Source of the DNA: Leucoraja erinacea
Taxonomy: Eukaryota
NCBI RefSeq assembly: GCF_028641065.1
Contig: NC_073386.1
Span: 55,180,001 to 55,244,000, forward strand
Length of the DNA: 64,000 bases
Direction of reading: 5' to 3'
A program made the position numbers and the translations under genes. Positions 18,415-60,611 of the stretch are shown here, piece by piece (position 1 is the first letter of the stretch; each line of letters starts with the position of its first letter). A model generated the notes under the pieces. That model did no database searches, was not told the DNA's origin, and saw only the letters and a program-made list of their open reading frames with translations.

Positions 18415-18678
18415 CTTGAACCTGGAGTTTGGTGATGTTGATCTGCTTCCCCAGAGCATTAATGGCCTCACATTGATACAGCCCTGCATCAGCTGGCTTG
18501 ACATCACGGATTGTCAATGTCCCATTCGCATAGTCTAGCTCGCTCCATCCGCTCGCTGACTGCCTCCTCAGTACAAGATGGGCAGGGCGGTTGGACTGGG
18601 TTGTGCAGCTGAACGTGACCCTGTCTCCTCCCTTCACAGCAGAGGGGGTGATGGAGAGAGTCGTGTCCCTGGGGCTAC
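18415..18678 (-). CDS. VCAM1: Copy B repeat-type Ig exon (only intact one)
   Basis: 264 nt, ORF 18398..18637. Confidence 0.72.
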
Positions 18679-19256: not shown

Positions 19257-19523
19257 CTTGAACGTGGAATTCCACCTCCTTGGTGATTGTCCCCAGTTTA
19301 TTGCCGGCTTCACAGCGGTACATTCCCGTGTCCCCGAACAGGGCCGGTGACAGGTGCAGAATCGCTCGGTCCTCGGCCACGACTGACCAGTTGCCGGCGG
19401 ATAACTTGCTCCACACTATCGTGGCAGCGGGGCTGCTGTCTGCAGCACAGGTTAGCCGAACATCCTGACCCTCTCTCACTGTGGCAGAGGGCTCTGCAGT
19501 AATGTCAATCCCCGTGGGAGCAT
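19257..19523 (-). CDS. VCAM1: Copy B exon 4, D3
   Basis: 267 nt, identical by eye to 58391-58657. Confidence 0.75.
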
Positions 19524-19640
19524 CTGTAGAAGGAGATGGGATAATTCACTACATTAAAGGCGGGCGACTTAAACCATTGTCCAGACTAGTCTATGACTGT
19601 GATTCCGTTCTCAATGTTATATCTCTGTCTCCATACTTAC

Positions 19641-19943
19641 AGTGAACCTGTAACGTTAGCGACCCCTCGGCCTTGCGTGGTTGGTTCTCCGTGAGTAATT
19701 GCACTCGGCATGTCAGCTCTTGTCCCGAGTCTCGCAATTCAGGCGTCAGTTCGTAGATGAAGTTCATCGCCGTTTCTTCCTCTGTGTAGTCACGGAAGCT
19801 GTCGGTCTTCACCAATGTTGTTCCTTTCAGCCACTCCACCTCCACTTGAGCGGGGTAGACTTTGGGGACCGTACATCTCACTGAGCCTCTCTGGCCAACT
19901 TCCAGACTGCCCACAGTCTCCACGATGAGTGTGTCGGACAGAG
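19641..19943 (-). CDS. VCAM1: Copy B exon 3, D2
   Basis: 303 nt, intact, ORF 19591..19923. Confidence 0.75.
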
Positions 19944-20124
19944 CTGCAACACAGAGAAAACAGAAGGAAAACTGCTCTCTTCAGACGCTGCGCTATAACG
20001 AGTGAAATCCCCCCAGAACAATGACCTTTCAGTGGAACAGCAGATGCTGGTTTAAACCGAAGATAGACACAAAAAGCTGGAGTAACTCAGCAGGACAGGT
20101 AGTATCTCTGAGAAAGAAGGAACG

Positions 20125-21575: not shown

Positions 21576-21725
21576 GAGGAACGGGTGAGGTTTCGGGTCG
21601 AGATTCTGTTTTTCTCTTCGTGGAGACTGCACGAATAATTGAGTGTTTCCAGTATTTTTTTAAACTTTTATGTGGCCGGACAAAGTTGCAACAAGTTTAC
21701 AGTCGGGAGATGGGTTAATACTCAC

Positions 21726-22002
21726 AGAATATATTGAGGTTGGCATATGTTCGTTTTTTCTTCTGTGCCGCATTTTGCGGAACAAGTGTACTTGTGTTGG
21801 TTCTGAGTAGTAACCGCGGAGATGGTGAATGTGGACACCGAGCCCCGAGTTGTGATTGTTCCGCCCAGGGGGTTATCGGTCCCGATTCTCCACGTGAAGG
21901 TCGGAGACGAGCAGTTCTTCGCCTCACAGTTCAACTCCAGCGAGTCCCCGATACGAGCCCACACGTTTCTAGACGGGTTTAACTCCAAATTGAAGGCGGA
22001 TC
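21726..22002 (-). CDS. VCAM1: Copy B exon 2, D1 (frameshifted near 3' end)
   Basis: Split across ORFs 21722..22030 and 21715..21927; 277 vs 276 nt. Confidence 0.7.
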
Positions 22003-22192
22003 CTGCAGTTTTGAAACAACACAAAAACAATATTATTTTTTTAAAAGCTTACAAGTTTAACGCTTTAAATATTCACCTCTTTGTTTCTTTAAACAAACAT
22101 ATACCAAAATTGATACTTTGGTGCCTGATATTTAACACAAGACGAATCGTAAGAAAATGCAGATTATTAATGGTGTAAAATAAATGAGAAAC

Positions 22193-22253
22193 CTGTGGCG
22201 AGCATCAATGCAAGAGTAATTGTAGCGGCTGGGTCGCATCTGTCTCCAGCCAT
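22193..22253 (-). CDS. VCAM1: Copy B exon 1, signal peptide MAGDRCDPAATITLALMLAT(G)
   Basis: 61 nt, same start and donor as copy A. Confidence 0.7.
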
Positions 22254-36623: not shown

Positions 36624-36790
36624 TCACAGTATCTCTCCTGCTATATTGTAAGATTCTTTCAAGCTTCTGCGAAAGGCATAAAACAGAGCAGTAAATATCA
36701 GTCCTGCTGATGCAAGTGCGGCTCCTGTGCATAATGTTTCCAGAACACCCGGAGGAATCTCGGCAGGAGTTGCGATATCAGTTATTTTTT
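36624..36790 (-). CDS. VCAM1: Copy A terminal exon: stalk, transmembrane helix, cytoplasmic tail (EKITDIATPAEIPPGVLETLCTGAALASAGLIFTALFYAFRRSLKESYNIAGEIL*)
   Basis: Polypyrimidine acceptor TCTGTCTTTTTTCAG|, phase 1, ~21-aa hydrophobic segment followed by RR, KESYNI resembles VCAM1 KGSYSL, TGA at 36624-36626. Not in the ORF track. Confidence 0.85.
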
Positions 36791-39700
36791 CTGAAAAAAG
36801 ACAGAAGAATATTTTTAAAGAACAATATCAGTAAAATACATTCTCCACACAACAATTCTCAATCTAAACTTACCGATAACTTGTATTTCCACAAATCCTG
36901 TCTGTTTCCCAAGTTTATTAATCACTTTGACCTTACAAAGCCCAGTGTCACTTGGTGTATTTTTCAAGGGTTGTAAAGTTGTCGTTACTGAAGGACAGCA
37001 CATTTTCACTGTTGTTCACTAGTTTCTTCCAGGTGAAATTGGCTGAGGGGAACAGGAGGAGGAGCCATCTTGGGGAACAGCTGCTAACCAGCAGCCGTCC
37101 GTTTAACTCACTTTTTTTTGGAGTTTTTAGTAAGTCCTGTCCTTTGCCTGTTGGAGAATGGACTTTTTAATGTGGGGGGAAGGAGGTAATTATACTTCTA
37201 GGTCCCTACCTGGTCGGTGAGGCAGCTTTTTCTCCGGGCTGCCCCGTCGACCCGTCCTCGTGGCCTACCAGCAGGCGTGGAGCGCCGTTTCCTGGCGGGG
37301 ACCGCCCAGCACCTCGGCTTCGGTGGCGGCACAGCGCTGGGGTGCTATCGCGGAGTGGAGCGGGCGATGCCTTGCTTGGGTCACCGCGCTGGAGCTCCGG
37401 TGAGCTGTGACCGTCGAGATCAACACCTCCGGGCTGCGGGTCTGCGGAGCGGAGCGGCGCCGACTCTAACATCGGGAGCCTGGGAGCTCCAAACCGGCGC
37501 GGCCTTGTCGGCTTCGGAAGCCGCGGTCCCCAGTCAGGAAGCGGCCGTTCCAGGTGGCCCAGCCGCTGAGAGGACTCTCCCGACGCCGGGGCAACACCAC
37601 CCGGTGAGAACGGCCAGGAACATAGGGCCTCCGTTGAAGCAATAGCGGTGGCCTCAATAGGCCTGACTTTGGGTAAACTGGGGATGGGGACTGGACATTG
37701 TGCCTTCCCCCACAGTGGTAAACATTGTGGGGAGATTATTTTTTTTTGTGTGTAAGTAAACATGTTAGTCTGTGTCCAAGATGGCTGTCGGAAGGGAGAG
37801 TGGTCGCTGGCGCGCTTTAGCTGCCGCTGCTCTCTCTTCACATTGTGTTTTTGATTTTTTGTCTTTGGAATGAATTCTGTTTTTAATTTGTGTTTTGGTG
37901 ATGTCTTTATTATTTATTTTATTCCGATTATATGTTTTATTATTCTTGTTATTCTCTGTAAGGTGTCCCAACTTGAAACGTTACCCATCCATGTTCTCCA
38001 GGGATGATACCCGACACACTGAGTTACTCCAGAACTTTGTGTCTTGTTGTTGTTGTAAATCAGCATATACAATTTATTTTCCTACATCATTACAACTAAT
38101 TGGTTTTCATCACATTGCTCTTTGGGAGAATTGATACCAACCTGCATCAGTTGGCTGGACATCACGGATTGTCAATGTCCCATTCTCAGAGTCTAGCTCG
38201 CTCCATCCGCTCGATGACTGTCCTCTTCAGTACAAGCTGGGCAGGGGGGTTGGACTGGGTTGTGCAGCTGATCATGACCCTGTCTCCTTCCTTCACAGCA
38301 GAGGGGGTGATGGAGAGAGTGGTGTCCCTGGGGCTACCTGAGACCAGAGGCGTGAGAAATTAATAAATTGCAAAATGTTTAGACAAATCTGTGCCAAGAA
38401 ACATAGTCATAGTCATAAAGTGATACAGTGTGGAAACAGGCCCTTCCGCCCAACTTGCCCACACCAGCCATCATTTCCCAGCTACACTAGTCCCACCTGC
38501 CCGCCTTTATTCCATGTCCCTCCAAACCTGTCCTATCCATGTACCTGTCTAACTGTTTCTTAAATGTTGGGATAGTCCCAGCCTTAACTACCTCCTCTAG
38601 CAGCTTGTTCCATACACCTACCACCCTTGGTGTAAAAAAGTTACCCCTCAGATTCCTATTAAGTCTTTTCCCCAACACATTAAACCTATGTTCTCTGGTC
38701 CTTGATTCACCTACTCTGGGCAAGAGACTCTATACATCTACCTGATCTATTCATATCATTATGTCTATTAATGATTGTTACAATCATAGATTATTGCAAT
38801 GTATAATAATCACCATGACTTGTCAGCTCAAGTTTCTGTTCAAGGAATTAGGCACAAAAAGCTAGAAAGTCTCTCCAGTCCTGTGCCAAAGGATGGCAGC
38901 AGTTAGTTACACTTTCACATACGTTGTTAAATTAAAACCCCCTCTAGTTGACATAAACGATTTGGTAACACAATTCTAAATTTAAAGTGGCAGAGTTCTG
39001 CCCAGTTTATTCCTGCATCCTGGTCAATATTTATCACTAAACCAACATCAGTCTGAAGAAGGATCCCAACTTGAAACGTTACCCATCCATGTTCTCCAGG
39101 GATGTTACCTGACACACTGAGTTACTCCAGAACTTTGTGTCTTGTTGTTGTTGTAAATCAGCATATACAATTTGTTTTTCTTCATCATTACAACTAATTG
39201 GTTTTCCTCACATTGCTCTTTGTGAGAATGTGCTGCACCACATTTCGTTGCTTCACATGTCAAAGGCACTTTATTGGTGACAAAGTGTTTGCGTAGTCCT
39301 GAATGGTATGAATGTTCCCCCATAAATCCACATCATTCTTTCCCCCCCTAGTAATAATTCAAGTGAAAATACTTTTCACATTCAGTTCCTGTAAATTTCT
39401 CATTAATTTCCACACAAACCTTGAACCTGGAGTTTGGTGATGTTGATCTGCTTCCCCAGAGCATTAGTGGCCTCACATTGATACAGCCCTGCATCAGCTG
39501 GCTGGACATCACGGATTGTCAATGTCCCATTCTCAGAGTCTAGCTCGCTCCATCCGCTCGATGACTGCCTCTTCAGTACAAGGTGGGCAGGGGGGTTGGA
39601 CTGGGTTGTGCAGCTGAACGTGACCCTGTCTCCTTCCTTCACAGCAGAGGGGGTGATGGAGAGAGTGGTGTCCCTGGGGCTACCTGAAACCAGAGACATG

Positions 39701-42700
39701 AGAAATTAATAAATTGCAAAAATTGAGCCAAATCCGTGCAAAGAAACATAGTCATAGGCATAAAGTGATATAGTGTGGAAGCAGGCCCTTCGGCCCAACT
39801 TGCCCAAACCAGCCATCATTTCCCAGCTACACTAGTCCCGCCTGCCCCTGTTTGGTCCATGTCCCTCCAAACCTGTCCTATCCATGTACCTGTCTAAGGT
39901 TTCTTAAATGTTGGGATAGTCCCAGCCTGCAGCTACCTCTATGGAGCGAAAAGAATACGGCAGCGTTTGTTCCAAACACCCAGCACCCTTGGGTGGTAAA
40001 AAAGTTACCCCCTCAGATTCCTATTAAGTCTTTTCCCTGACACATTAACGAAGGGGAAGTGACAGCAAGGGGTCAGAATTGTGAGAATACTCTGTTCAAG
40101 AGACTCTATACCCCTACCTGATGCTATTCAAATTCATTGTGTCTCATTAATGCCAATTGTTACAATCAGAGATAGATACGGAATGGAATGTTAATGCTGA
40201 GCCACCATGACAGGTTGGTTAATGCAGCTCAAGTGTTCGGTCGAAAGGAATTAGGTCTACAAAAAGCTAGAAATTCTCTAGACTCCTGTGCCAAAGATGG
40301 GGTTGGAGGAGTTAGTTACACTTCGCACCTGGAACAACTGCGTTGAATGGAGTTAAAACCCCCTCTAGTTGACATCTCTTGCGGTTTAACACAATTCTAA
40401 ATTTAAAGTGGCAGAGTTCTGCCCAGTTTATTCCTGCATCCTGGTCAATATTTATCACTAAACCAACATCAGTCTGAAGAAGGATCCCAACTTGAAACGT
40501 TACCCATCCATGTTCTCCAGGGATGTTACCCGACACACTGAGTTACTCCAGAACTTTGTGTCTTGTTGTTGTTGTAAATCAACATATACAATTTATTTCT
40601 CTTCATCATTACAACTAATTGGTTTTCCTCACATTGCTCTTTGTGAGAATGTGCTGCACCACATTTCGTTGCTTCACATGTCAAAGGCACTTTATTGGTG
40701 ATAAAGTGTTTGCGTAGTCCTGAATGGTATGAATGTTCCCCCATAAATCCAAATCATTCTTTCCCCCCCCCTCGTAATAATTCAAGTGAAAATACTTTTC
40801 ACATTCAGTTCCTGTAAATTTCTCATTAATTTCCACACAAACCTTGAACCTGGAGTTTGGTGATGTTGATCTGCTTCCCCAGAGCATTAGTGGCCTCACA
40901 TTGATACAGCCCTGCATCAGCTAGCTGGACATCATGGATTGTCAATGTCCCATTCTCAGAGTTTAGCTCGCTCCATCCACTCGATGACTGCCTCCTCAGT
41001 ACAAGGTGGGCAGGGGGGTTGGACTGGGTTGTGCAGCTGAACATGATATTGTCTCCTTCCTTCACAGCAGAGGGGGTGATGGAGAGAGTGGTGTCCCTGG
41101 GGCTACCTGAAACCAGAGGCGTGAGAAATTAATAAATTGCAAAATGTTTAGACAAATCCATGCAAAGAAACATAGTCATAGTCATAAAGTGATATAGTGT
41201 GGAAACAGGCCCTTCGGCCCAACTTGCCCAAACCAGCCATCATTTCCCAGCTACACTCGTCCCACCTGCCCGCCTTTATTCCATGTCCCTCCAAACCTGT
41301 CCTATCCATGTACCTGTCTAACTGTTTCTTAAATGTTGGGATAGTCCCAGCCTCAACTACCTCCTCTAGCAGCTTGTTCCATACACCCACCACACTTGGT
41401 GTAAAAAAGTTACCCCTCAGATTCCTATTAAGTCTTTTCCCCGACACATTAAACCTGTGTTCTCTGGTCCTTGATTCACCTACTCTGGGCAAGAGACTCT
41501 ATACATCTGCCTGATCTATTCATATCATTATGTCTATTAATGATTGTTACAATCATAGATTATTGCAATGTATAATAATCACCATGACTTGTCAGCTCAA
41601 GTTTCTGTTCAAGGAATTAGGCACAAAGAGCTAGAAATTCTCTCCACTCCTGTGCCAAAGAATGGCAGCAGTTAGTTACACTTTCACATACGTTGTTAAA
41701 TTAAAACCCCCTCTAGTTGACATAAAATATTCTGTAACACAATTTTTAATTTAACGTGGCAGAGTTCTGCCCAGTTTATTCCTGTATCCTGGTCAATATT
41801 TATCACTAAACCAACATCAGTCTGAAGAAGGATCCCAACTTGAAACGTTACCCATCCATTTTTCCAGGGATGTTACCTGACACACTGAGTTACTCCAGAA
41901 CTTTGTGTCTTTTTGTTGTTGTAAATCAACATATACAATTTGTTTTTCTCCATCATTACAACTAATTGGTTTTCCTCACATTGCTCTTTGTGAGAATGTG
42001 CTGCACCACATTTCGTTGCTTCACATGTCAAAGGCACTTTATTGGTGATAAAGTGTTTGCGTAGTCCTGAATGGTATGAATGTTCCCCCATAAATCCAAA
42101 TCATTCTAGTAATAATTCAAGTAAAAATACTTTTTACATTCAGTTCCTGTAAATTTCTCATTAATTTCCACACAAACCTTGAACCTGGAGTTTGGTGATG
42201 TTGATCTGCTTCCCCAGAGCATTAGTGGCCTCACATTGATACAGCCCTGCATCAGCTGGCTGGACATCACGGATTGTCAATGTCCCATTCTCAGAGTCTA
42301 GCTCGCTCCATCCGTTCGATGACTGCCTCTTCAGTACAAGGTGGGCAGGGGGGTTGGACTGGGTTGTGCAGCTGAACGTGACCCTGTCTCCTTCCTTCAC
42401 AGCAGAGGGGGTGATGGAGAGAGTGGTGTCCCTGGGGCTACCTGAAACCAGAGACATGAGAAATTAATAAATTGCAAAAAGTTGAGCCAAATCCGTGCAA
42501 AGAAACACAATCATAGGCATAAAGTGATATAGTGTGGAAACAGGCCCTTCGGCCCAACTTGCCCACACCAGCCATCATGTCCCAGCTACACTAGTCCCAC
42601 CTGCCCCTGTTTGGTCCATGTCCCTGCAAACCTGTCCTATCCATGTACCTATCTAACTGTTTCTTAAATGTTGGGATAGTCCCAGCCTCAACTACCTCCT

Positions 42701-45700
42701 CTAGCAGCTTGTTCCATACACCCACCACCCTTGGTGTAAAAAAGTTACCCCTCAGATTCCTATTAAGTCTTTTCCCCGACACATTAAACCTATGTTCTCT
42801 GGTCCTTGATTCACCTACTCTGGGCAAGAGACTCTATACATCTACCTGATCTATTCATATCATTATGTCTATTAATGATTGTTACAATCATAGATTATTG
42901 CAATGTATAATAATCACCATGACTTGTCAGCTCAAGTTTCTGTTCAAGGAATTAGGCACAAAAAGCTAGAAAGTCTCTCCACTCCTGTGCGAAAGGATGG
43001 CAGCAGTTAGTTACACTTTCACATACGTTGTTAAATTAAAACCTCCTCTAGTTGACATAAATGATTCTGTAACATAATTCTAAATTTAACGTGGCAGAGT
43101 TCTGCCCAGTTTATTCCTGCATCCTGGTCAATATTTATCACTAAACCAACATCAGTCTGAAGAAGGATCCCAACTTGAAACGTTACCCATCCATGTTCTC
43201 CAGGGATGTTACCTGACACACTGAGTTACTCCAGAACTTTGTGTCTTGTTGTTGTTGTAAATCAACATATACAATTTGTTTTTCTTCATCATTACAACTA
43301 ATTGGTTTTCCTCACATTGCTCTTTGTGAGAATGTGCTGCACCACATTTCGTTGCTTCACATGTCAAAGGCACTTTATTGGTGATAAAGTGTTTGCGTAG
43401 TCCTGAATGGTATGAATGTTCCCCCATAAATCCACATCATTCTTTCCCCCCCCCCCCTAGTAATAATTCAAGTGAAAATACTTTTTACATTCAGTTCCTG
43501 TAAATTTCTCATTAATTTCCACACAAACCTTGAACCTGGAGTTTGGTGATGTTGATCTGCTTCCCCAGAGCATTAGTGGCCTCACATTGATACAGCCCTG
43601 CATCAGCTAGCTGGACATCACGGATTGTCAATGTCCCATTCTCAGAGTCTAGCTCGCTCCATCCACTCGATGACTGCCTCTTCAGTACAAGGTGGGCAGG
43701 GGGGTTGGACTGGGTTGTGCAGCTGAACGTGACCCTGTCTCCTTCCTTCACAGCAGAGGGGGTGATGGAGAGAGTGGTGTCCCTGGGGCTACCTGAAACC
43801 AGAGGCGTGAGAAATTAATAAATTGCAAAATGTTTAGACAAATCCATGCAAAGAAACATAGTCATAGTCATAAAGTGATATAGTGTGGAAACAGGCCCTT
43901 CGGCCCAACTTGCCCAAACCAGCCATCATTTCCCAGCTACACTCGTCCCACCTGCCCGCCTTTATTCCATGTCCCTCCAAACCTGTCCTATCCATGTACC
44001 TGTCTAACTGTTTCTTAAATGTTGGGATAGTCCCAGTCTCAACTACCTCCTCTAGCAGCTTGTTCCATACACCCACCACCCTTGGTGTAAAAAGGTTATC
44101 CCTCAGATTCGTATTAAGTCTTTTCCCCGACACATTAAACCTATGTTCTCTGGTCATTGATTCACCTACTCTGGGCAAGAGACTCTATACATCTACCTGA
44201 TCTATTCATATCATTATGTCTATTAATGATTGTTACAATCATAGATTATTGCAATGTATAATAATCACCATGACTTGTCAGCTCAAGTTTCTGTTCAAGG
44301 AATTAGGCACAAAAAGCTAGAAATTCTCTCCACTCCTGTGCCAAAGGATGGCAGCAGTTAGTTACACTTTCACATACGTTGTTAAATTAAAACCTCCTCT
44401 AGTTGACATAAATGATTCTGTAACACAATTCTAAATTTAACGTGGCAGAGTTCTGCCCAGTTTATTCCTGCATCCTGGTCAATATTTATCACTAAACCAA
44501 CATCAGTCTGAAGAAGGATCCCAACTTGAAACGTTACCCATCCATGTTCTCCAGGGATGTTACCCGACACACTGAGTTACTCCAGAACTTTGTGTCTTGT
44601 TGTTGTTGTAAATCAGCATATACAATTTGTTTTTCTTCATCATTACAACTAATTGGTTTTCCTCACATTGCTCTTTGTGAGAATGTGCTGCACCACATTT
44701 CGTTGCTTCACATGTCAAAGGCACTTTATTGGTGATAAAGTGTTTGCGTAGTCCTGAATGGTATGAATGTTCCCCCATAAATCCACATCATTCTTTCCCC
44801 CCCCTAGTAATAATTCAAGTGAAAATACTTTTTACATTCAGTTCCTGTAAATTTCTCATTAATTTCCACACAAACCTTGAACCTGGAGTTTGGTGATGTT
44901 GATCTGCTTCCCCAGAGCATTAGTGGCCTCACATTGATACAGCCCTGCATCAGCTGGCTGGACATCACGGATTGTCAATGTCCCATTCTCAGAGTCTAGC
45001 TCGCTCCATCCGCTCGATGACTGCCTCTTCAGTACAAGGTGGGCAGGGGGGTTGGACTGGGTTGTGCAGCTGAACGTGATATTGTCTCCTTCCTTCACAG
45101 CAGAGGGGGTGATGGAGAGAGTGGTGTCCCTGGGGCTTCCTGAAACCAGAGACATGAGAAATTAATAAATTGCAAAAATTGAGCCAAATCCGTGCAAAGA
45201 AACAGAATCATAGGCATAAAGTGATATAGTGTGGAAACAGGCCCTTCGGCCCAACTTGCCCATACCAGCCATCATTTCCCAGCTACACTCGTCCCACCTG
45301 CCCGCATTTGGTCCATGTCCCTCCAAACCTGTCCTATCCATGTACCTGTCTAACTGTCTTAAAAGTTGGGATAGTCCCAGCCTCAACTACCTCCTCTAGC
45401 AGCTTGTTCCATACACCCAGCACCCTTGGTGTAAAAAGGTTACCCCTCAGATTCGTATTAAGTCTTTTCCCTGACACATTAAACCTATGTTCTCTGGTCC
45501 TTGATTCACCTACTCTGGGCAAGAGACTCTATACATCTACCTGATCTATTCATATCATTATGTCTATTAATGATTGTTACAATCATAGATAATTGCAATG
45601 TATAATAATCACCATGACTTGTCAGCTCAAATTTCTGTTCAAGGAATTAGGCACAAAAAGCTAGAAAGTCTCTCCAGTCCTGTGCCAAAGGATGGCAGCA

Positions 45701-51700: not shown

Positions 51701-54700
51701 CAATTTGTTTTTCTTCATCATTACAACTAATTGGTTTTCCTCACATTGCTCTTTGTGAGAATGTGCTGCACCACATTTCGTTGCTTCACATGTTAAAGGC
51801 ACTTTATTGGTGATAAAGTGTTTGCGTAGACCTGAATGGTATGAATGTTCCCCCATAAATCCAAATCATTCTTTCCCCCCCTCGTGATAATTCAAGTGAA
51901 AATACTTTTCACATTCAGTTCCTGTAAATTTCTCATTAATTTCCATACAAACCTTGAACCTGGAGTTTGGTGATGTTGATCTGCTTCCCCAGAGCATTAG
52001 TGGCCTCACATTGATACAGCCCTGCATCAGCTGGCTGGACATCACGGATTGTCAATGTCCCATTCTCAGAGTCTAGCTCGCTCCATCCGCTCGATGACTG
52101 CCTCCTCAGTACAAGTTGGGCAGGGGGGTTGGACTGGGTTGTGCAGCTGAATGTGACCCTGTCTCCTTCCTTCACAGCAGAGGGGGTGATGGAGAGAGTG
52201 GTGTCCCTGGGGCTACCTGAGATCAGAGGCGTGAGAAATTAATGAATTGCAAAATGTTTAGACAAATCCGTGCAAAGAAACATAGTTATAGTCATAAAGT
52301 GATACAGTGTGGAAACGGGTCTTTCGGCTCAACTTGCCCACACCAGCCATCATGTCCCAGCTACACTAGTCCCGCCTGCCCCTGTTTGGTCCATGTCCCT
52401 CCAAACCTGTCCAACTGTTTCTTAAAAGTTGGGATAGTCCCATCCTCAATGACCTCCTCTAGCAGCTTGTTCCATACACCCACCACTCTTGTTTAAAAAA
52501 AGTTACCCCTCAGATTCCTATTAAGTCTTTTCCCCGACACATTAAACCTATGTTCTCTGGTCCTTGATTCACCTACTCTGGGCAAGAGACTCTATACATC
52601 TACCTGATCTATTCATATCATTATGTCTATTAATGATTGTTACAATCATATATTATTGCAATGTATAATAATCACCATGACTTGTCAGCTCAAGTTTCTG
52701 TTCAAGGAATTAGGCACAAAAAGCTAGAAAGTCTCTCCAGTCCTGTGCCAAAGGATGGCAGCAGTTAGTTACACTTTCACATACGTTGTTAAATTAAAAC
52801 CTCCTCTAGTTGACATAAAAGATTCGGTAATACAATTCTAAATTTAACGTGCCAGAGTTCTGCCCAGTTTATTCCTGCATCCTGGTCAATATTTATCACT
52901 AAACCAACATCAGTCTGAAGAAGGATCCCAACTTGAAACGTTACCCATCCATGTTCTCCAGGGATGTTACCTGACAAACTGAGTTACTCCAGAACTTTTT
53001 GTCTTTTTGTTGTTGTAAATCAACATATACAATTTTTTTTTTCCATCATTACAACTAATTGGTTTTCCTCACATTGCTCTTTGTGAGAATGTGCTGCACC
53101 ACATTTCATTGCTTCACATGTCAAAGGCACTTTATTGGTGATAAAGTGTTTGCGTAGTCCTGAATGGTATGAATGTTCCCCCATAAATCCAAATCATTCT
53201 AGTAATAATTCAAGTGAAAATACTTTTTACATTCAGTTCCTTGAAATTTCTCATTAATTTCCACACAAACCTTGAACCTGGAGTTTGGTGATGTTGATCT
53301 GCTTCCCCAGAGCATTAGTGGCCTCACATTGATACAGCCCTGCATCAGCTGGCTGGACATCATGTATTGTCAATGTCCCATTCTCAGAGTCTAGCTCGCT
53401 CCATCCACTCGATGACTGCCTCTTCAGTACAAGCTGGGCAGGGGGGTTGGACTGGGTTGTGCAGCTGAACGTGATATTGTCTCCTTCCTTCACAGCAGAG
53501 GGGGTGATGGAGAGAGTGGTGTCCCTGGGGCTACCTGAAACCAGAGGCGTGAGAAATTAATAAATTGCAAAAAGTTTAGACAAATCCATGCAAAGAAACA
53601 TAGTCATAGTCATAAAGTGATACAGTGTGGAAACGGGTCTTTCGGCTCAACTTGCCCACACCAGCCATCATGTCCCAGCTACACTAGTCCCGCCTGCCCG
53701 TGTTTGGTCCATGTCCCTCCAAACCTGTCCAACTGTTTCTTAAAAGTTGGGATAGTCCCATCCTCAACTACCTCCTCTAGCAGCTTGTTGCATGCACCCA
53801 CCACTCTTTTTAAAAAAAAGTTCGCTCTCAGATTCCTATTAAGTCTTTTCCCCGACACATTAAACCTATGTTCCCTGGTCCTTGATTCACCTACTCTGGG
53901 CAAGAGACTCTATACATCTACCTGATCTATTCATATCATTATGTCTATTAATGATTGTTACAATCATATATTATTGCAATGTATAATAATCACCATGACT
54001 TGTCAGCTCAAGTTTCTGTTCAAGGAATTAGACACAAAAAGCTAGAAATTCTCTCCACTCCTGTGCCAAAGGATGGCAGCAGTTAGTTACACTTTCACAC
54101 ACGTTGTTAAATTAAAACCTCCTCTAGTTGACATAAAAGATTCGGTAACATAATTTTAAATTTAACGTGGCAGAGTTCTGCCCAGTTTATTCCTGCATCC
54201 TGGTCAATATTTATCACTAAACCAACATCAGTCTGAAGAAGGATCCCAACTTGAAACGTTACCCATCCATGTTCTCCAGGGATGTTACCTGACACACTGA
54301 GTTACTCCAGAACTTTGTGTCTTTTTATTGTTGTAAATCAGCATATACAATTTGTTTTTCTCCATCATTACAGCTAATTGGTTTTCCTCACATTGCTCTT
54401 TGTGAGAATGTGCTGCACCACATTTTGTTGCTTCACATGTTAAAGGCACTTTATTGGTGATAAAGTGTTTGCGTAGTCCTGAATGGTATGAATGTTCCCC
54501 CATAAATCCACATCATTCTAGTAATAATTCAAGTGAAAATACTTTTCACATTCAGTTCCTGTAAATGTCTCATTAATTTCCATACAAACCTTGAACCTGG
54601 AGTTTGGTGATGTTGATCTGCTTCCCCAGAGCATTAATGGCCTCACATTGATACAGCCCTGCATCAGCTGGCTGGACATCACGGATTGTCAATGTCCCAT

Positions 54701-57700
54701 TCTCAGAGTCTAGCTCGCTCCATCCGCTCGATGACTGCCTCCTCAGTACAAGGTGGGCAGGGGGGTTGGACTGGGTTGTGCAGATGAACATGACCCTGTC
54801 TCCTTCCTTCACAGCAGAGGGGGTGATGGAGAGAGTGGTGTCCCTGGGGCTACCTGAAACCAGAGGCGTGAGAAATTAATGAATTGCAAAAAGTTGAGCC
54901 AAAACCGTGCGAAAAAACAGTCATAGAGTGATACATTGTGGAAACACGTCTTTCGGCTCAACTTGCCCAAACCAGCCATCATGTCCCAGCTACACTAGTC
55001 CCGCCTGCCCGTGTTTGGTCCATGTCCCTCCAAACCTATCCTATCCATGTACCTGTGTAAGGTACACAGAAATGCTGGAGAAACTCAGCGGGTGCAGCAG
55101 CATCTATGGAGCGAAAGAGATAGGGAACGTTTCGGTCCCAAACCCTTCTTCAGACTGATAGGGGGTGGGAAGAAGAAAGGAAAAAGGAGGAGGGGGAGCC
55201 CGAGGGCTGAGGGAGAGGTACGAAGGGGAGGAGACAGCAAGGGTTAACAGAATTGTGAGAATTCAATGTTCATGCCCCCAGGATGCAGACTCCCCAAGCG
55301 GAATATGAGGTGCTGTTCCTCCAATTTCCGGTGTTGCTCACTCTGGCCAAGGAGGAGGCCCAAGACAGAGAGGTCGGATACGGAATGGGAGGGGGAGTTG
55401 AAGTGTCGAGCCACCGTGAGGTCAGGTTGGTTAATGCGGATCGAGCGGAGGTGTTCGGCGAAACGATCGCCAAGCCTACGCTTGGTCTCACCGATATAGA
55501 TCAGCTGACATCTAGAGCAGCGGATGCAATAGATGGGGTTGGAGGAGGTGCAGGTGAACCTCTGTCGCACCTGGAACGAACTGCTGGGTTCCTTGAATGG
55601 AGTCAAGGGGGGAGCTAAAGCGACAAGTGTAGCATCTCTTGCGGTTTAAGGGAAAGTGCCCGGGGAAGGGGTGGTGTCAGAGTTCTGCCCAGTTTATTCC
55701 TGCATCCTGGTCAATATTTATCACTAAACCAACATCAGTCTGAAGAAGGATCCCAGCTTGAAACGTTACCCATCCATGTTTTCCAGGGATGTTACCTGAC
55801 ACACTGAGTTACTCCAGAACTTTGTGTCTTTTTGTTGTTGTAAATCAGCATATACAATTTGTTTTTCTTCATCATTACAACTAATTGGTTTTCCTCACAT
55901 TGCTCTTTGTGAGAATGTGCTGCACCACATTTCGTTGCTTCACATGTTAAAGGCACTTTATTGGTGATAAAGTGTGTGCGTAGTCCTGAATGGTATGAAT
56001 GTTCCCCCATAAATCCACATCATTCTAGTAATAATTCAAGTGAAAATACTTTTCACATTCAGTTCCTGTAAATTTCTCATTAATTTCCATACAAACCTTG
56101 AACCTGGAGTTTGGTGATGTTGATCTGCTTCCCCAGAGCATTAATGGCCTCACATTGATACAGCCCTGCATCAGCTGGCTGGACATCATGGATTGTCAAT
56201 GTCCCATTCTCAGAGTCTAGCTCGCTCCATCCGCTCGATGACTGCCTCCTCAGTACAAGGTGGGCAGGGGGGTTGGACTGGGTTGTGCAGCTGAACGTGA
56301 CCCTGTCTCCTTCCTTCACAGCAGAGGGGGTGATGGAGAGAGTGGTGTCCCTGGGGCTACCTGAGATCAGAGGCGTGAGAAATTAATGAATTGCAAAATG
56401 TTTAGACAAATCCGTGCAAAGAAACATAGTTATAGTCATAAAGTGATACATTGTGGAAACGGGTCTTTCGGCTCAACTTGCCCACACCAGCCATCATGTC
56501 CCAGCTACACTAGTCCCGCCTGCCCGTGTTTGGTCCATGTCCCTCCAAACCTGTCCAACTGTTTCTTAAAAGTTGGGATAGTCCCATCCTCAACTACCTC
56601 CTCTAGCAGCTTGTTGCATGCACCCACCACTCTTTTTAAAAAAGGTTCGCTCTCAGATTCCTATTAAGTCTTTTCCCCGACACATTAAACCTATGTTCTC
56701 TGGTCCTTGATTCACCTACTCTGGGCAAGAGACTCTATACATCTACCTGATCTATTCATATCATTATGTCTATTAATGATTGTTACAATCATATATTATT
56801 GCAATGTATAATAATCACCATGACTTGTCAGCTCAAGTTTCGGTTCAAGGAATTAGGCACAAAAAGCTAGAAATTCTCTCCACTCCTGTGCCAAAGGATG
56901 GCAGCAGTTAGTTACACTTTCACACACGTTGTTAAATTAAATTGGATTGGTTAGTGCGGAACGAGCGGAGGTGTTCGGCAAAACGATCGCCAAGCCTACG
57001 CTTGGTCTCACCAATATAGATCAGCTGACATCTAGAGCATTTGGAGGAGGTGCAAGTGAACCTCTATCGCACCTGGAACGACTGCTTGGGTCCTTGAATT
57101 GAGTCAAGGGGGGAGGTAAAGCGACAAGTGTAGCATCTCTTGCGGTTGCAAGGGAAAGTACCTGGGGAAGGGGTGGAGTGGGGGGAAGGGAAGAATTGAC
57201 AAGGGAGTTACGGAGGGAGCAGTCTTTGCGGAAGACCGACGGGGGGGGGGGGAGATGGGAAGATGTGGTGAGTGGTGGGGTCACGTTGGAGGTGGCGAAA
57301 CTGATGGAGGATTATTTGTTGTATGTGCCAGCTAGTGGGGTGAAAGGTGAGGACCAGGGGGACTCTGCCCTTATTGCGAGTGGGAGGGCATGTACCTGCC
57401 CTTAAATGTTGGGATAGTCCCAGCCTCAACTACCATGGATGGTATGAATGTTCCCCCATAAATCCAAATCATTCTTGTCCCCCCTCGTAAGAATTTAAGT
57501 GAAAATACTTTTCACATTCAGTTCCTGTAAATTTCTCATTAATTTCCACACAAACCTTGAACCTGGAGTTTGGTGATGTTGATCTGCTTCCCCAGAGCAT
57601 TAATGGCCTCACATTGATACAGCCCTGCATCAGCTGGCTGGACATCACGGATTGTCAATGTCCCATTCTCAGAGTCTAGCTCGCTCCATCCGCTCGATGA

Positions 57701-60397
57701 CTGCCTCCTCAGTACAAGGTGGGCAGGGGGGTTGGACTGGGTTGTGCAGCTGAACGTGACCCTGTCTCCTTCCTTCACAGCAGAGGGGGTGATGGAGAGA
57801 GTGGTGTCCCTGGGGCTACCTGAAACCAGAGGCGTGAGAAATTAATAAATTGCAAAACGTTGAGCCAAATCCGTGCAAAGAAACATAGTCATAGTCATAA
57901 AGTGATATAGTGTGGAAACAGGCCCTTCGGCCCAACTTGCCCACACCAGCCATCATTTCCCAGCTACACTCGTCCCACCTGCCCGCATTTGGTCCATGTT
58001 CCTCCAAACCCGTCCTATCCATGTACCTGTCTAACTATTTCTTAAATGTTGGGATCGTCCCTGCCTCAGCTACCTCCTCTAGCAGCTTGTTCCATACACC
58101 CACCAACCTTTGTGTGAAAAAGTTACTCCTCAGATTCCTACTAAATCTTTTCCCCTTCACCATAAACCTATGTCTGGTCATCGATGCACCCACTATGGGC
58201 AAAAGACTCTGTGCATCTGCCCCTCACCTGCGCTCCAAGGAATAGAGTCCCAGCCTGCCCAACCTCTCCCTATAGCTCAGACCCTTTAGCCCTAGTGACA
58301 TCCTGGTAAATCTTCTCTCAACCCTTTCCAGCTTGACCACGTCTTTCCTATAACAATGATAGTAAAATTACAATAGTGAAACAAACGCACCTTGAACGTG
58401 GAATTCCACCTCCTTGGTGATTGTCCCCAGTTTATTGCCGGCTTCACAGCGGTACATTCCCGTGTCCCCGAACAGGGCCGGTGACAGGTGCAGAATCGCT
58501 CGGTCCTCGGCCACGACTGACCAGTTGCCGGCGGATAACTTGCTCCACACTATCGTGGCAGCGGGGCTGCTGTCTGCAGCACAGGTTAGCCGAACATCCT
58601 GACCCTCTCTCACTGTGGCAGAGGGCTCTGCAGTAATGTCAATCCCCGTGGGAGCATCTGTAGAAGGAGATGGGATAATTCACTACATTAAAGGCGGGCG
58701 ACTTAAACCATTATCCAGACTGCGTCTATGACTGTGATTCCGTTCTCAATGTTATATCTCTGTCTCCATACTTACAGAGAACCTGTAACGTTAGCGACCC
58801 CTCGGCCTTGCGTGGTTGGTTCTCCGTGAGTAATTGCACTCGGCATGTCAGCTCTTGTCCCGAGTCTCGCAATTCAGCCGTCAGTTCGTAGGTGAAGTTC
58901 ATCGCCGTTTCTTCCTCTGTGTAGTCACGGAAGCTGTCGGTCTTCAGCAATGTTGTTCCTTTCAGCCACTCCACCTCCACTTGAGCGGGGTAGACTTTGG
59001 GGACCGTACATCTCACGGAGCCTCTCTGGCCAACTTCCAGGCTGCCCACAGTCTCCACGATGAGTGTGTCGGACAGAGCTGCAACGACACGTGGATTCAG
59101 GAATCAAACAGGGAATCAGGGTGGAATGTACAGCACCCAAGTTGCCCATCGATTTAGTCAGAGGGTGGTGAATCTGCGGAATTCATCGCCACAGAAGGCT
59201 GTGGAGGCCAAGGCAATGGATATATTTAAGGCAGAAATAGGCAGATTCTTAATTAGTACGGGTGTCAGAGGTTATGGGGAGAAGGCAGGAGAATGGGGTT
59301 AAGAGGGAGAGATGGATTAGCCATGATTGAATGGCGGAGTAAACTCGATGGGCCGAATGGGCGAATTCTGCTCCTGTTATTTATGAACATGATTTGTTAC
59401 CAAACTCTCATTCGATCGGCAAAAGGACAACTTTCATGTCAGAAAACATTCATGAATCTGTTAACTAAAATATTTGTTGAAGACCAAAACAAAGACAATC
59501 GTTGGAAGGCCCTGAATAAAACAGCGTGTGCCGGAAATACTCATCTGGCAGGCAGTATTGGTGGAGAGAAAACAGAGGGAAAACTGCTCTCTTCAGACGC
59601 TGCGCTACAACGAGTGAAATCTCCCCAGAACAATGACCTTTCAGTGGAACAACAGATGCTGGTTTTAACCGAAGATAGACACAAAAAGCTGGAGTAACTC
59701 AGCAGGACAGGTAGTATCTCTGAGAAAGAAGGAACGGTCGAGATTCTGTTTCTCTCTTCGTGGAGGCTGCACGAATAGTTAAGTGTTTCCAGTATTTTTT
59801 TTTTTTTTAACTTTTATGTGGCCGGACAAAGTTGCAACAAGTTTACAGTCGGGAGATGGGTTAATACTCACAGAATATATTGAGGTTGGCATATGTTCGT
59901 TTTACATCTGCGCCGCATTTTGCGGAACAAGTGTACTTGTGTTGGTTCTGAGTAGTAACCGCGGAGATGGTGAACTTGGACACCGAGCCCCGAGTTGTGA
60001 TTGTTCCGCCCAGGGGGTTATCGGTCCCGATTCTCCACGTGAAGGTCGGAGACGAGCAGCTCTTCGCCACACAGTTCAACTCCAGCGAGTCCCCGATACG
60101 AGCCCACACGTTTCTAGACGGGTTTAACTCCAACTTGAAGGCGGATCCTGCAGTTTTGAAACATTACAAAAGCAATATTATTTTTTAAAAGCTTATACGT
60201 TTAACGCTTTAAATATCCACCTCTTTGTTTCTTTAAACAGACAGATACCAAAATTGATACTTTGGTGCCTGATATTTAACACAAAACGAATCCGAAGAAA
60301 ATGCAGATTATTAATGCTGTAAAATAAATGAGAAACCTGTGGCGAGCATCAATGCAAGAGTAATTGTAGCGGCTGTGTCGCATCTGTCTCCAGCCAT
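36624..60397 (-). CDS. VCAM1: VCAM1-like gene copy A (spliced CDS span): signal peptide + D1 + D2 + D3 + 14 tandem D7-like Ig domains + TM/cytoplasmic tail, ~1589 aa
   Basis: 19 exons with GT-AG boundaries, all phase 1, join in frame (61+276+303+267+14x264+167=4770 nt). D1 FKLELNPSRNVWARIGDSLELNC..C..P.FTWR.GTDNPL resembles human VCAM1 D1 (FKIETTPESRYLAQIGDSVSLTC..C..PFFSWRTQIDSPL). D2 has VYP and W/LLKG motifs. Tail KESYNI resembles VCAM1 KGSYSL. Confidence 0.88.
38131..38337 (-). pseudogene. Dead repeat Ig exon R15 (pseudo-exon)
   Basis: Acceptor intact, but there is a +1 nt insertion near 38221 and a deletion removing the second Cys codon, the exon 3' end and the splice donor. Confidence 0.8.
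39420..39683 (-). CDS. VCAM1: Copy A repeat Ig exon R14
   Basis: 264 nt, intact splice sites, ORF 39403..39699. Confidence 0.82.
40843..41106 (-). CDS. VCAM1: Copy A repeat Ig exon R13
   Basis: 264 nt, intact splice sites, ORF 40826..41065. Confidence 0.82.
42178..42441 (-). CDS. VCAM1: Copy A repeat Ig exon R12
   Basis: 264 nt, intact splice sites, ORF 42161..42457. Confidence 0.82.
43529..43792 (-). CDS. VCAM1: Copy A repeat Ig exon R11
   Basis: 264 nt, intact splice sites, ORF 43512..43751. Confidence 0.82.
44876..45139 (-). CDS. VCAM1: Copy A repeat Ig exon R10 (EGDNIT variant)
   Basis: 264 nt, intact splice sites, ORF 44859..45155. Confidence 0.82.
46220..46483 (-). CDS. VCAM1: Copy A repeat Ig exon R9
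   Basis: 264 nt, intact splice sites, ORF 46203..46442. Confidence 0.82.
46688..47301 (-). mobile_element. Penelope-like fragment in R8-R9 intron
   Basis: ORF 46869..47231 GIY-YIG. Confidence 0.88.
47732..47995 (-). CDS. VCAM1: Copy A repeat Ig exon R8 (EGDNIT variant)
   Basis: 264 nt, intact splice sites, ORF 47715..48011. Confidence 0.82.
49087..49350 (-). CDS. VCAM1: Copy A repeat Ig exon R7
   Basis: 264 nt, intact splice sites, ORF 49070..49366. Confidence 0.82.
50431..50694 (-). CDS. VCAM1: Copy A repeat Ig exon R6
   Basis: 264 nt, intact splice sites, ORF 50414..50653. Confidence 0.82.
50908..51525 (-). mobile_element. Penelope-like fragment in R5-R6 intron
   Basis: ORF 51093..51455 GIY-YIG. 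Confidence 0.88.
51953..52216 (-). CDS. VCAM1: Copy A repeat Ig exon R5
   Basis: 264 nt, intact splice sites, ORF 51936..52175. Confidence 0.82.
53271..53534 (-). CDS. VCAM1: Copy A repeat Ig exon R4 (EGDNIT variant)
   Basis: 264 nt, intact splice sites, ORF 53254..53493. Confidence 0.82.
54590..54853 (-). CDS. VCAM1: Copy A repeat Ig exon R3
   Basis: 264 nt, intact splice sites, ORF 54573..54812. Confidence 0.82.
55059..55676 (-). mobile_element. Penelope-like fragment in R2-R3 intron
   Basis: ORF 55244..55606 GIY-YIG. Confidence 0.88.
56097..56360 (-). CDS. VCAM1: Copy A repeat Ig exon R2
   Basis: 264 nt, intact splice sites, ORF 56080..56319. Confidence 0.82.
56945..57387 (-). mobile_element. 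Penelope-like fragment in R1-R2 intron
   Basis: Matches 17790-18244; VPLVLTFHP motif. Confidence 0.8.
57556..57819 (-). CDS. VCAM1: Copy A repeat Ig exon R1 (88 aa, D7-like)
   Basis: TTTCAG|GTAGCC...CAAG|GTTTGT, 264 nt, open frame, DAGLYQC. Confidence 0.88.
58391..58657 (-). CDS. VCAM1: Copy A exon 4, Ig domain D3
   Basis: CTACAG| ... |GTGCGT, 267 nt; EGQDVRLTC..P.ATIVWSK...DTGMYRCEAGNKLG...KEVEFHVQ. Confidence 0.92.
58776..59078 (-). CDS. VCAM1: Copy A exon 3, Ig domain D2
   Basis: TTGCAG| ... |GTAAGT, 303 nt; GSLEVGQRGSVRCTVPKVYP...WLKG...DSGQELTCRVQL resembles VCAM1 D2. Confidence 0.92.
59150..59385 (+). mobile_element. CR1 3' fragment in copy A intron 2
   Basis: FSQRVVNLRNSSPQKAVEA; region absent from copy B. 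Confidence 0.7.
59872..60147 (-). CDS. VCAM1: Copy A exon 2, Ig domain D1 (integrin-binding type, GTDNPL loop)
   Basis: acceptor CTGCAG|, donor |GTGAGT, 276 nt, 4-Cys pattern CxxxxC...CxxxC typical of VCAM/ICAM/MAdCAM D1; ORF 59861..60133. Confidence 0.92.
60337..60397 (-). CDS. VCAM1: Copy A exon 1, signal peptide MAGDRCDTAATITLALMLAT(G)
   Basis: ACCATGG Kozak start, hydrophobic stretch, donor CAG|GTTTCT, 61 nt (phase 1), ~105 nt downstream of TATAAA. Confidence 0.85.
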
Positions 60398-60438: not shown

Positions 60439-60611
60439 TGATTTCACTTCTGCAAGGGGCGTCAGGCTCTGGAGCTGTGAGCCTGGGCTCCGCCGCCCCG
60501 CTTTATAACCCCGTCTGGAAGAGCAGGGAACTTCCCTTGGCTTCAGGCGAGCAATCCCCACCACGCACCGCTCACTGGCTCCTGGTCTTTCTCTGCTGAG
60601 GGGAATTTACC
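60439..60611 (-). promoter_or_regulatory. Copy A promoter: TATAAA (60502-60507), NF-kB-like sites GGGAACTTCCC (60526-60536) and GGGAATTTACC (60601-60611), IRF-like GAAGTGAAA (60442-60450)
   Basis: Motifs read directly; mammalian VCAM1 promoters are known to use tandem kB sites, a TATA box and an IRF-1 site. Confidence 0.7.

What the first reader, a model, noticed from the sequence alone, without database searches (positions are those of the whole stretch)
36624..60397. Giant VCAM1: a 17-Ig-domain adhesion receptor built by 14-fold tandem amplification of one stalk exon
Seen: after D1-D2-D3 come 14 intact, near-identical 264-nt exons (GSPRDTTLSITPSAVKEGD..DAGLYQCEATNALGKQINITKLQVQ), all with GT-AG sites, both Cys and no stops, then a VCAM1-type TM/tail exon. 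Known: human VCAM1 has 7 Ig domains from a D1-3/D4-6 duplication, giving two integrin sites. The repeat here resembles the membrane-proximal D7 (VKEGD..SCT..DAG.Y.CE..N..G.Q). Inference: this lineage lengthened the stalk instead of duplicating the binding head. One integrin-binding D1 would sit on a rod of ~65-70 nm (assuming ~4 nm per Ig), the same domain count as Siglec-1. Each repeat carries 2-3 N-glycan sequons (NGT, NIT, plus DNIT in R4/R8/R10). I know of no described VCAM1 with this architecture.
Basis: partly seen in the sequence, partly recalled or inferred. Interest (0 to 1): 0.9.

Follow-up and report, generated by a model that had tools for sequence, protein, structure and literature searches.

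The report
Skate VCAM1 copy with 14-domain stalk
A little-skate copy of the blood-vessel adhesion gene VCAM1 carries 14 intact, near-identical stalk exons (17 antibody-like domains if all are used); related skates have the same long gene, but nobody has shown how many repeats reach the finished protein.

Summary
On the minus strand, a VCAM1-type gene runs from ATG 60397 to stop 36624. It has a leader exon, D1, D2 and D3, then 14 intact 264-nt phase-1/phase-1 Ig exons, then a TM/tail exon. Exon lengths sum to 4770 nt, or 1589 aa in frame.

- a broken 15th repeat copy;
- a remnant of a lost last Ig exon;
- a second, degenerate VCAM1 paralog at 2-22 kb;
- a third, short paralog outside the window.

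The window is Leucoraja erinacea. The architecture is not unique to it. Amblyraja radiata RefSeq XP_032885016.1, misnamed "hemicentin-2-like", has D1-D3 plus 14 repeats. A Rhinoraja longicauda model has 13. Sharks and rays have 1-5 copies of the same exon type.

All 14 units are distinct, which argues against an assembly artefact. The exons vary 2.7-fold less than their adjacent introns and carry no indels (p = 2e-5), so they are under constraint.

RNA-like contigs cover repeat exons and the TM exon but not unique intron. They do not show how many repeats a transcript holds.

Verdict: a real, skate-wide, undescribed long-stalk variant of VCAM1. Its function and full-length expression are unproven.

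The parts
60502..60536 (-). Core promoter of gene A: TATAAA (60507-60502) with an NF-kB-like GGGAAGTTCCC (60536-60526) about 20 nt upstream
   Evidence: Read directly. Identical in paralog B. Consensus match only; function not tested.
60337..60397 (-). Exon 1 coding part: leader peptide MAGDRCDTAATITLALMLAT, ends in phase 1
   Evidence: donor CAG|gtttct.
59872..60147 (-). D1 exon (276 nt): VCAM1-type I-set head with 4 Cys and the TDNPL loop
   Evidence: human VCAM-1 D1, E 4e-17. (42% identity to rodent D1). (I-set). (boundaries).
58776..59078 (-). D2 exon (303 nt)
   Evidence: rodent D2, E 2e-13. (C1-set / ICAM D2)..
58391..58657 (-). D3 exon (267 nt)
   Evidence: matches rodent D6 and D3..
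57556..57819 (-). Repeat exon R1
   Evidence: 264 nt, phase 1-1, intact.
56097..56360 (-). Repeat exon R2
54590..54853 (-). Repeat exon R3 (FIC instead of FSC; the Cys is kept)
53271..53534 (-). Repeat exon R4 (extra DNIT sequon)
51953..52216 (-). Repeat exon R5
50431..50694 (-). Repeat exon R6
49087..49350 (-). Repeat exon R7
47732..47995 (-). Repeat exon R8 (extra DNIT sequon)
46220..46483 (-). Repeat exon R9
   Evidence: Together with R1, it is an exact match to an RNA-like contig.
44876..45139 (-). Repeat exon R10 (extra DNIT sequon)
43529..43792 (-). Repeat exon R11
42178..42441 (-). Repeat exon R12
40843..41106 (-). Repeat exon R13 (the most diverged unit)
39420..39683 (-). Repeat exon R14
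   Evidence: Covered by RNA-like contigs with a GT..AG joint at its donor.
38130..38337 (-). Pseudo-exon (15th repeat copy): 1-nt insertion near 38221, resulting stop at 38188-38186, 3' part deleted
36874..37051 (-). Remnant (3' part only) of the membrane-proximal 'Dlast' Ig exon that sharks keep. It has an in-frame TGA at 36950-36948. RNA-like contigs do not cover it.
   Evidence: depth 0 in bin 36901-37100. (Dlast present in sharks).
36624..36790 (-). TM/tail exon, enters in phase 1: ...VLETLCTGAALASAGLIFTALFYAF RRSLKESYNIAGEIL stop
   Evidence: RNA-like contigs at 97.6-98% identity run on into the 3' UTR.
2543..22253 (-). Paralog B, degenerate. It comprises exon 1 near 22253; D1 22003-21725 with a 1-nt insertion in an A run near 21760; D2 near 19929-19609; D3 19521-19252; one intact repeat exon 18678-18415; repeat fragments at 5585-5388, 4512-4408 and 3328-3200; and the 5' part of Dlast at 2727-2543, cut off by an insertion.

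Best explanation
Gene A is a genuine, skate-wide long paralog of VCAM1.

An ancestral chondrichthyan VCAM1 had the layout leader, D1, D2, D3, a few copies of one I-set exon (R), a last Ig domain, then a TM/tail. In skates the last Ig exon decayed. In one tandem paralog, unequal crossing-over multiplied the roughly 1.35-kb R unit (exon plus intron with its transposon fragments) to 13-14 copies. Part of this happened as a three-unit block of about 4.2 kb.

Because every R exon is 264 nt and phase 1 at both ends, any number of them splices in frame, from D3 through to the TM exon. The most likely product is a type I membrane glycoprotein. It would have one integrin-binding VCAM1 head (Asp kept in the TDNPL loop) on a heavily N-glycosylated rod of up to 14 Ig domains.

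Shown: the gene structure, family membership, constraint on the exons, presence of the long gene in three skate genera, and transcription of repeat and TM exons.

Inferred: that most or all repeats are included in the mRNA, that the protein reaches the membrane, that it binds integrin, and that stalk length is what selection acts on.
For: Structure and frame.

VCAM1 identity. The nearest named proteins are chondrichthyan VCAM1(-like).

Not an assembly artefact:
- All 14 exons and units are distinct. Introns are 2-10% diverged and fall into unit length classes 1507-1522 and 1318-1355 nt in a long-short-short pattern.
- Independent assemblies of Amblyraja radiata (14 R) and Rhinoraja longicauda (13 R) show the same thing.

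Constraint:
- 19 of 264 exon sites vary, against 53 of 269 sites in the immediately flanking intron (Fisher p = 2.3e-5).
- There are no indels in the exons against at least 21 gap runs in the flanks.
- R is the best-conserved domain between Leucoraja and Rhinoraja: 87% identity, against 63% for D1, 75% for D2 and 80% for D3.
- Rare repeat variants (M22, Q34, K38, H58) are shared between the Leucoraja and Amblyraja arrays.

Expression:
- Contigs of two RNA-like runs cover R14 and the TM exon plus 3' UTR, but not unique intron or the broken last-Ig exon.
- A GT..AG joint leads from an R donor to an R acceptor.
- One contig equals R1/R9 exactly and differs from the short paralog's repeats.

The R-to-TM splice matches the annotated short paralog (LQVQ|EKIPDIATP).
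Against: - Among the 14 copies, nonsynonymous to synonymous changes are 15:6, close to the neutral expectation. The constraint seen is therefore not clearly at the protein level.
- The 3' end carries a frameshifted pseudo-exon and a broken Ig exon.
- The neighbouring paralog B is degenerate.
- The Amblyraja model ends without a TM.
- No Leucoraja protein model for gene A turned up in the range 390-2720 aa.
- Contig word depth on repeat exons is only 2-3.4 times that of the TM exon, not 6-14 times. The tool itself calls this a poor measure, and 3' bias is likely.
- The R-to-R joint and much of the repeat coverage could come from the short paralog C, whose two repeats are nearly identical.
- X15 and X16 are only guessed to be RNA.
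Confidence: 0.55

Rival explanations
1. The array is real, but splicing skips most repeats. The usual protein would be a short VCAM1 with D1-D3 and a few R domains. The long array would then be a by-product of unequal crossing-over, or a reservoir for isoforms of different length.
For: - All R donors are the same weak AAG|GTTTGT.
- RefSeq isoforms in sharks differ by exactly one or two R domains: Heptranchias 712 vs 624 aa, Carcharodon 880 vs 704 aa.
- Repeat-to-TM contig depth is only 2-3.4 fold.
Against: - Exons that are rarely included should decay like the introns. Yet all 14 are intact and vary 2.7-fold less than their flanks.
- Long arrays persist in three genera.
- The contig that equals R1/R9 shows use of at least some gene A repeats.
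Confidence: 0.22
2. Gene A is a decaying or non-functional duplicate. Its exons look intact only because gene conversion from the functional short paralog C keeps overwriting them.
For: - Paralogs within a species are more alike than orthologs: RhL vs RhS 99-100%, LeA vs LeC 93-100%.
- The N:S ratio is near neutral.
- The 3' exons are broken.
- Paralog B has a frameshift in D1.
- The Amblyraja model has no TM.
- No protein model for gene A was found.
Against: - Conversion tracts would homogenise the adjacent intron as well, but flanks within 150 nt of the exons vary 2.7 times more and carry all the indels.
- The promoter, leader, D1-D3, all 14 repeats and the TM exon are open and in frame.
- The gene A-specific TM exon is present in RNA-like contigs.
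- The 13-14-copy state is kept in three genera.
Confidence: 0.18
3. The 14 copies are an assembly artefact: over-expansion of a shorter array.
For: Tandem units 95-98% alike are hard to assemble. No read-level check of this array succeeded: the DNA run X22 laid nothing.
Against: - Every unit is unique in both exon and intron, with structured indels.
- There are no N runs in the window.
- Two other skate assemblies give 13 and 14 copies.
Confidence: 0.03

Closest known systems
Mammalian VCAM1 (7 Ig domains; PDB 1VCA, 1VSC, 1IJ9 for D1-D2)
   Same: - D1 with four Cys and the acidic C-D loop (RIGTDNPL vs RTQIDSPL).
- Same D2 and D3 order.
- One-domain-per-exon, phase-1 gene structure.
- Single TM and a short tail with K-x-SY.

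   Different: - No D1-3/D4-6 duplication, so there is a single integrin-binding head.
- 14 copies of a D7-like domain instead of one.
- 17 domains against 7.
Shark and ray VCAM1-like proteins (e.g. Pristiophorus japonicus 709 aa, Carcharodon carcharias 704/880 aa, Pristis pectinata 446 aa)
   Same: Same domain types in the same order. The same R exon type, beginning G-x-PRDT, is repeated in tandem. The tail is the same.
   Different: They have 1-5 R copies. Most sharks keep a distinct last Ig domain (F-x-WKK motif) that is only a broken remnant here.
Amblyraja radiata XP_032885016.1 'hemicentin-2-like' and the long half of the Rhinoraja longicauda 'vascular cell adhesion protein 1b' model
   Same: D1-D3 followed by 14 or 13 R domains. 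R identity to this window's repeats is 93.6% and 87%. These are the orthologous or equivalent long paralogs.
   Different: They come from other species. Both models lack a proper TM end. The name 'hemicentin' is not borne out: the precomputed Pfam list for the Amblyraja model (the one so named) has no VWA, EGF, G2F or TSP1 domains.
Sialoadhesin / Siglec-1 (17 Ig domains)
   Same: The same total number of Ig domains, and one binding head on a long Ig rod. Siglec-1 proteins are the next full-length hits, at 26-28% identity.
   Different: The head is a VCAM1 I-set domain, not a sialic-acid-binding V-set. Siglec-1 domains are diverged from one another, not near-identical recent copies. The resemblance is an analogy in shape only.

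Membership tests
VCAM1 | N-terminal I-set domain with an extra disulfide (4 Cys) and the integrin-binding acidic C-D loop (human QIDSPL) | tested here: met
   aligned to human VCAM-1 residues 1-77, E 4e-17. All four Cys are aligned, and TDNPL lies opposite IDSPL; 42% identity to rodent D1.
VCAM1 | D2 (C2 / ICAM-D2-like) and D3 (I-set) following D1 in that order | tested here: met
   D2 matches rodent residues 121-199, and D3 matches 222-309 and 510-597. Pfam C1-set / ICAM1_3_5_D2 for D2, and I-set for D3.
VCAM1 | Single-pass TM and a short cytoplasmic tail with K-x-S-Y | tested here: met
   RRSLKESYNIAGEIL against rodent RKANMKGSYSLVEAQKSKV and shark RRSNFKGSYQMPAEQIV. No Pfam model covers this part.
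VCAM1 | Closest named relatives are VCAM1 orthologs | tested here: met
   the top hits are 'vascular cell adhesion protein 1(-like)' of sharks, rays, lungfish and amphibians. These names are automatic annotations.
VCAM1 | Internal D1-3/D4-6 duplication giving two integrin sites (mammalian 7-domain form) | tested here: not met
   Only one D1-type exon is present. The caecilian protein also gives only a weak second D1 match (E 1e-3), so this feature seems to define the amniote or mammalian form rather than the family.
VCAM1 | Binding of alpha4 integrins; cytokine-inducible endothelial expression | not testable with these tools
   The only lead is an NF-kB-like site next to the TATA box.
VCAM1 | Conserved synteny with the VCAM1 locus | not tested
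Hemicentin (name given to the Amblyraja ortholog) | VWA domain, long Ig array, G2F, EGF and TSP1 modules | tested here: not met
   The window exons are Ig only. The precomputed Pfam list of P0001 lacks VWA, EGF_CA, G2F and TSP1. The head is VCAM1 D1.
Siglec-1 / sialoadhesin | N-terminal V-set sialic-acid-binding domain | tested here: not met
   D1 scores as I-set, and its best single-domain structural relative is VCAM-1. Siglec-1 hits are only 26-28% identical overall.

The most novel reading that the evidence does not exclude
For tens of millions of years, skates have maintained a dedicated VCAM1 paralog whose stalk of 13-14 near-identical Ig exons is kept open by selection and homogenised by concerted evolution. 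It would give an ultra-long (about 60-70 nm) adhesion receptor. Exon skipping or copy-number change could tune its length, and read-through of the weak donors (in-frame stop after 5 codons) could yield a secreted form.
Probability: 0.35. Interest if true: 0.65.

Novelty: new variant of a known kind. Interest (0 to 1): 0.5.

Why it matters
VCAM1 is a textbook leukocyte-adhesion receptor whose domain number is usually treated as fixed: 7 domains, with 6- and 3-domain splice forms.

The comparison made here has three consequences.
- The ancestral jawed-vertebrate layout looks like one head (D1-D3) plus a variable run of D7-like domains. The mammalian two-headed form would then be derived.
- One lineage, the skates, pushed the run to 13-14 domains in a separate paralog.
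- If the long form is made, it is a natural experiment on how receptor reach above the glycocalyx affects integrin-mediated adhesion. It is also a clean case of exon-level concerted evolution.

The work also corrects public annotation. "Hemicentin-2-like" in Amblyraja is a VCAM1 paralog. The Leucoraja RefSeq model fuses a degenerate copy with its neighbour.

Tried and rejected
- Tandem Repeats Finder missed the array because the period exceeds 500.
- A whole-unit MAFFT alignment gave an inflated 15% intron divergence, because units carry different transposon fragments. I replaced it with BLAST-based estimates and near-flank estimates. The far-flank windows are misaligned and were ignored.
- The TM exon peptide found no homologue in the word-indexed protein search. 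The length window probably explains this.
- Read laying gave less than hoped:
  - the raw RNA run X23 (another organism) gave only transposon reads and nothing on the exons;
  - the DNA run X22 laid nothing, so there was no depth test of copy number;
  - contig runs cannot give stoichiometry;
  - the 13 letters upstream of the TM exon in contig record 9 were not shown, so the exon spliced to TM remains unidentified.
I therefore had no nucleotide sequence of the Amblyraja or Rhinoraja loci and could make no cross-species dN/dS estimate.
- Positional orthology of repeats between Leucoraja and Amblyraja showed no clear diagonal, only shared variants.
- A Dscam-like mutually exclusive exon array was considered and rejected. 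The exons are near-identical and symmetric, so alternative choice among them would add no diversity.
All searches were exon by exon by reference, and the 1589-aa length comes from summed exon lengths.
- Literature searches found no description of a skate VCAM1 of this kind.


Full report
**What is there.** The feature lies on the minus strand. A motif scan and boundary mapping found 14 open 264-nt exons between 57819 and 39420. Each encodes G-S-P-R-D-T-T...L-Q-V-Q. Each is flanked by an identical acceptor (...tttcag|GT) and donor (CAAG|gtttgt), and each is phase 1 at both ends.

Upstream lie, in order:
- a TATA box with an adjacent NF-kB-like site;
- a leader exon, ATG at 60397;
- D1 (60147-59872), D2 (59078-58776) and D3 (58657-58391).

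Downstream lies a TM/tail exon (36790-36624) that enters in phase 1 and ends in TGA. The exon lengths sum to 4770 nt, which is 1589 codons in frame. Everything was searched exon by exon, by reference.

- Between R14 and the TM exon there is a 15th repeat copy (38337-38130). It has a 1-nt insertion that creates a stop, and its 3' part is deleted.
- There is also the 3' remnant (37051-36874) of a different Ig exon, with an in-frame TGA. Its 5' half has been replaced by GC-rich transposon sequence.
- A second tandem VCAM1 copy, gene B, occupies 22.3-2.5 kb. Its promoter, leader and D1-D3 are 97-100% identical to gene A in the exons and about 94% overall.
- Gene B has a 1-nt insertion near the end of D1. 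It holds one intact repeat exon (18678-18415) and three repeat fragments. The 5' part of its last Ig exon is cut off by an insertion.

**Species and annotation.** The RefSeq protein "vascular cell adhesion protein 1-like [Leucoraja erinacea]" (P0156, 1067 aa) is encoded 100% by gene B's odd pseudo-exons (5585-5388 and 2717-2460). It then continues into a third copy outside the window, with D1-D3, two repeats and a TM/tail. So the window is little skate. That model fuses a degenerate gene with its neighbour, gene C, and the species has a normal-sized short VCAM1 paralog. No Leucoraja protein model matching gene A appeared among proteins of 390-2720 aa.

**Family.**
- D1 aligns to human VCAM-1 D1 (PDB 1VCA, 1VSC, 1IJ9) at E 4e-17. 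All four Cys align, and TDNPL lies opposite IDSPL.
- Against a rodent 7-domain VCAM1, D1 matches D1 and D4, D2 matches D2 and D5, and D3 matches D6 and D3.
- Pfam gives I-set for D1, D3 and R, and C1-set / ICAM-D2 for D2.
- The tail RRSLKESYNIAGEIL keeps the K-x-SY motif of rodent, amphibian and shark VCAM1.

**Comparative context.** An exhaustive search with one repeat exon returned, far above everything else, XP_032885016.1 "hemicentin-2-like" of the thorny skate Amblyraja radiata. It is 1554 aa and has D1-D3 plus 14 repeats, ending in a short non-TM tail. A Rhinoraja longicauda model (2100 aa) is a long copy with 13 repeats fused to a short copy with 2. Amblyraja also has a short 511-aa VCAM1-like protein on the same chromosome.

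Sharks and rays carry the same exon type 1-5 times, usually followed by a distinct last Ig domain. RefSeq isoforms there differ by exactly one or two repeats. The caecilian VCAM1 also looks like D1-D3 plus repeat-like domains plus a last domain. Repeating this exon is therefore the ancestral theme. Skates lost the last domain and hold both a short and a very long paralog.

Paralogs within a species are more alike than orthologs between species, which indicates concerted evolution. Rare repeat variants (M22, Q34, K38, H58) occur in both the Leucoraja and Amblyraja arrays. R is the best-conserved domain between Leucoraja and Rhinoraja: 87% identity, against 63-80% for D1-D3.

**Is the array real and constrained?**
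- The window has no N runs.
- All 14 exons are different haplotypes.
- Introns differ by 2-10%. Units fall into length classes that form a long-short-short block of about 4.2 kb repeated three times (units 2-10), followed by short units.
- The exons have 19 variable sites in 264 and no indel. The 150 nt on either side have 53 variable sites in 269 ungapped columns and at least 21 gap runs (Fisher p = 2.3e-5).
- Relative to the flank rate, nonsynonymous sites are clearly depleted: 15 seen, 39.6 expected, p = 7e-6. Synonymous sites are only marginally depleted: 6 seen, 12.4 expected, p = 0.04.
- The N:S ratio itself (15:6) is near the neutral expectation.

So there is constraint on the exons and on their frame. 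It cannot be assigned cleanly to the protein rather than to splicing signals or to exon-centred conversion.

**Expression.** Only one read-laying run was available.
- The raw RNA run X23 belongs to another organism and hit only transposon parts. The DNA run X22 laid nothing. Neither is a test.
- Two small runs of "organism A" (X15 and X16) are kept as contigs and only guessed to be RNA. They cover R14 and the TM exon plus 3' UTR at 97.6-100% identity. They give zero on unique intron bins and zero on the broken last-Ig exon.
- A GT..AG joint links an R donor to an R-type acceptor.
- Both alleles of the R38/K38 site appear at about 1:1 in X15, against 7:7 in the array.
- One 216-nt contig equals R1/R9 exactly and differs from both repeats of the short paralog.

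Against this, the R-to-R joint could come from the short paralog. Contig depth on the repeats is only 2-3.4 times that of the TM exon, which is a poor measure. The exon spliced to TM could not be read. Transcription of gene A is therefore likely, but the number of repeats per mRNA is unknown.

**Verdict.** The "giant VCAM1" is a real gene architecture shared by skates. It is present but misnamed in public annotation, and I found no description of it in the searched literature.

Noticed in passing
window 2543-22253 (minus strand): A second tandem VCAM1 paralog (gene B). It has an intact promoter and leader, a 1-nt insertion in D1, one intact repeat exon, three repeat fragments and a truncated last Ig exon. 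It is probably a pseudogene.
   Followed up: partly
window 5388-5585 and 2460-2717; protein P0156: The RefSeq Leucoraja erinacea 'VCAM1-like' model (1067 aa) strings gene B's pseudo-exons together and reads on into a third paralog left of the window (D1-D3 + 2 repeats + TM). It looks like a fusion artefact.
   Followed up: partly
protein P0001 (XP_032885016.1, Amblyraja radiata): It is named 'hemicentin-2-like' but is D1-D3 of VCAM1 plus 14 stalk repeats, with no hemicentin modules. Its C-terminus (GIPRNQWKCDILSSTFENYP) appears to read a last-Ig remnant out of frame.
   Followed up: partly
window 39270-57819, introns of the array: Reading through any repeat donor gives G-L-C/Y-G-N-stop. An AATAAA/ATTAAA-like hexamer lies 135-150 nt downstream in 12 of 14 units (R1 has none within 400 nt; in R7 the first is at +253). 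This is the point of earlier notes s1-876325 and s1-876363. Whether it is used is unknown.
   Followed up: partly
window 55247-55645, 51096-51494, 46872-47270, 17608-17988; also 49203-49742, 48040-48387, 43837-44184, 41151-41498: The repeat-unit introns carry transposon ORF fragments that were amplified along with the exon. From the motifs alone, one type looks like a GIY-YIG (Penelope-like) piece and is found only in the long units. The other looks like a reverse-transcriptase C-terminal piece. Neither type was searched against a library.
   Followed up: no
window 60502-60536 and 22350-22385: A TATAAA box lies about 20 nt downstream of GGGAAGTTCCC, an NF-kB-like site. The arrangement is identical in genes A and B. 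From memory, it recalls the NF-kB-driven mammalian VCAM1 promoter.
   Followed up: no
window 31347-32273: A minisatellite with a 14-nt unit (CAGTGTGACAGGCC), about 67 copies, 91% matches. It lies in the intergenic stretch between genes A and B.
   Followed up: no
window 37100-38100: The GC-rich insert that replaced the 5' half of the last Ig exon is heavily covered, with strand bias, by polyA RNA reads of another organism (X23, depth up to about 1260). It looks like an expressed repeat family.
   Followed up: no
window 5976-7146 (minus strand): Open reading frames with reverse-transcriptase motifs (a LINE-type element) lie inside gene B's long intron region.
   Followed up: no
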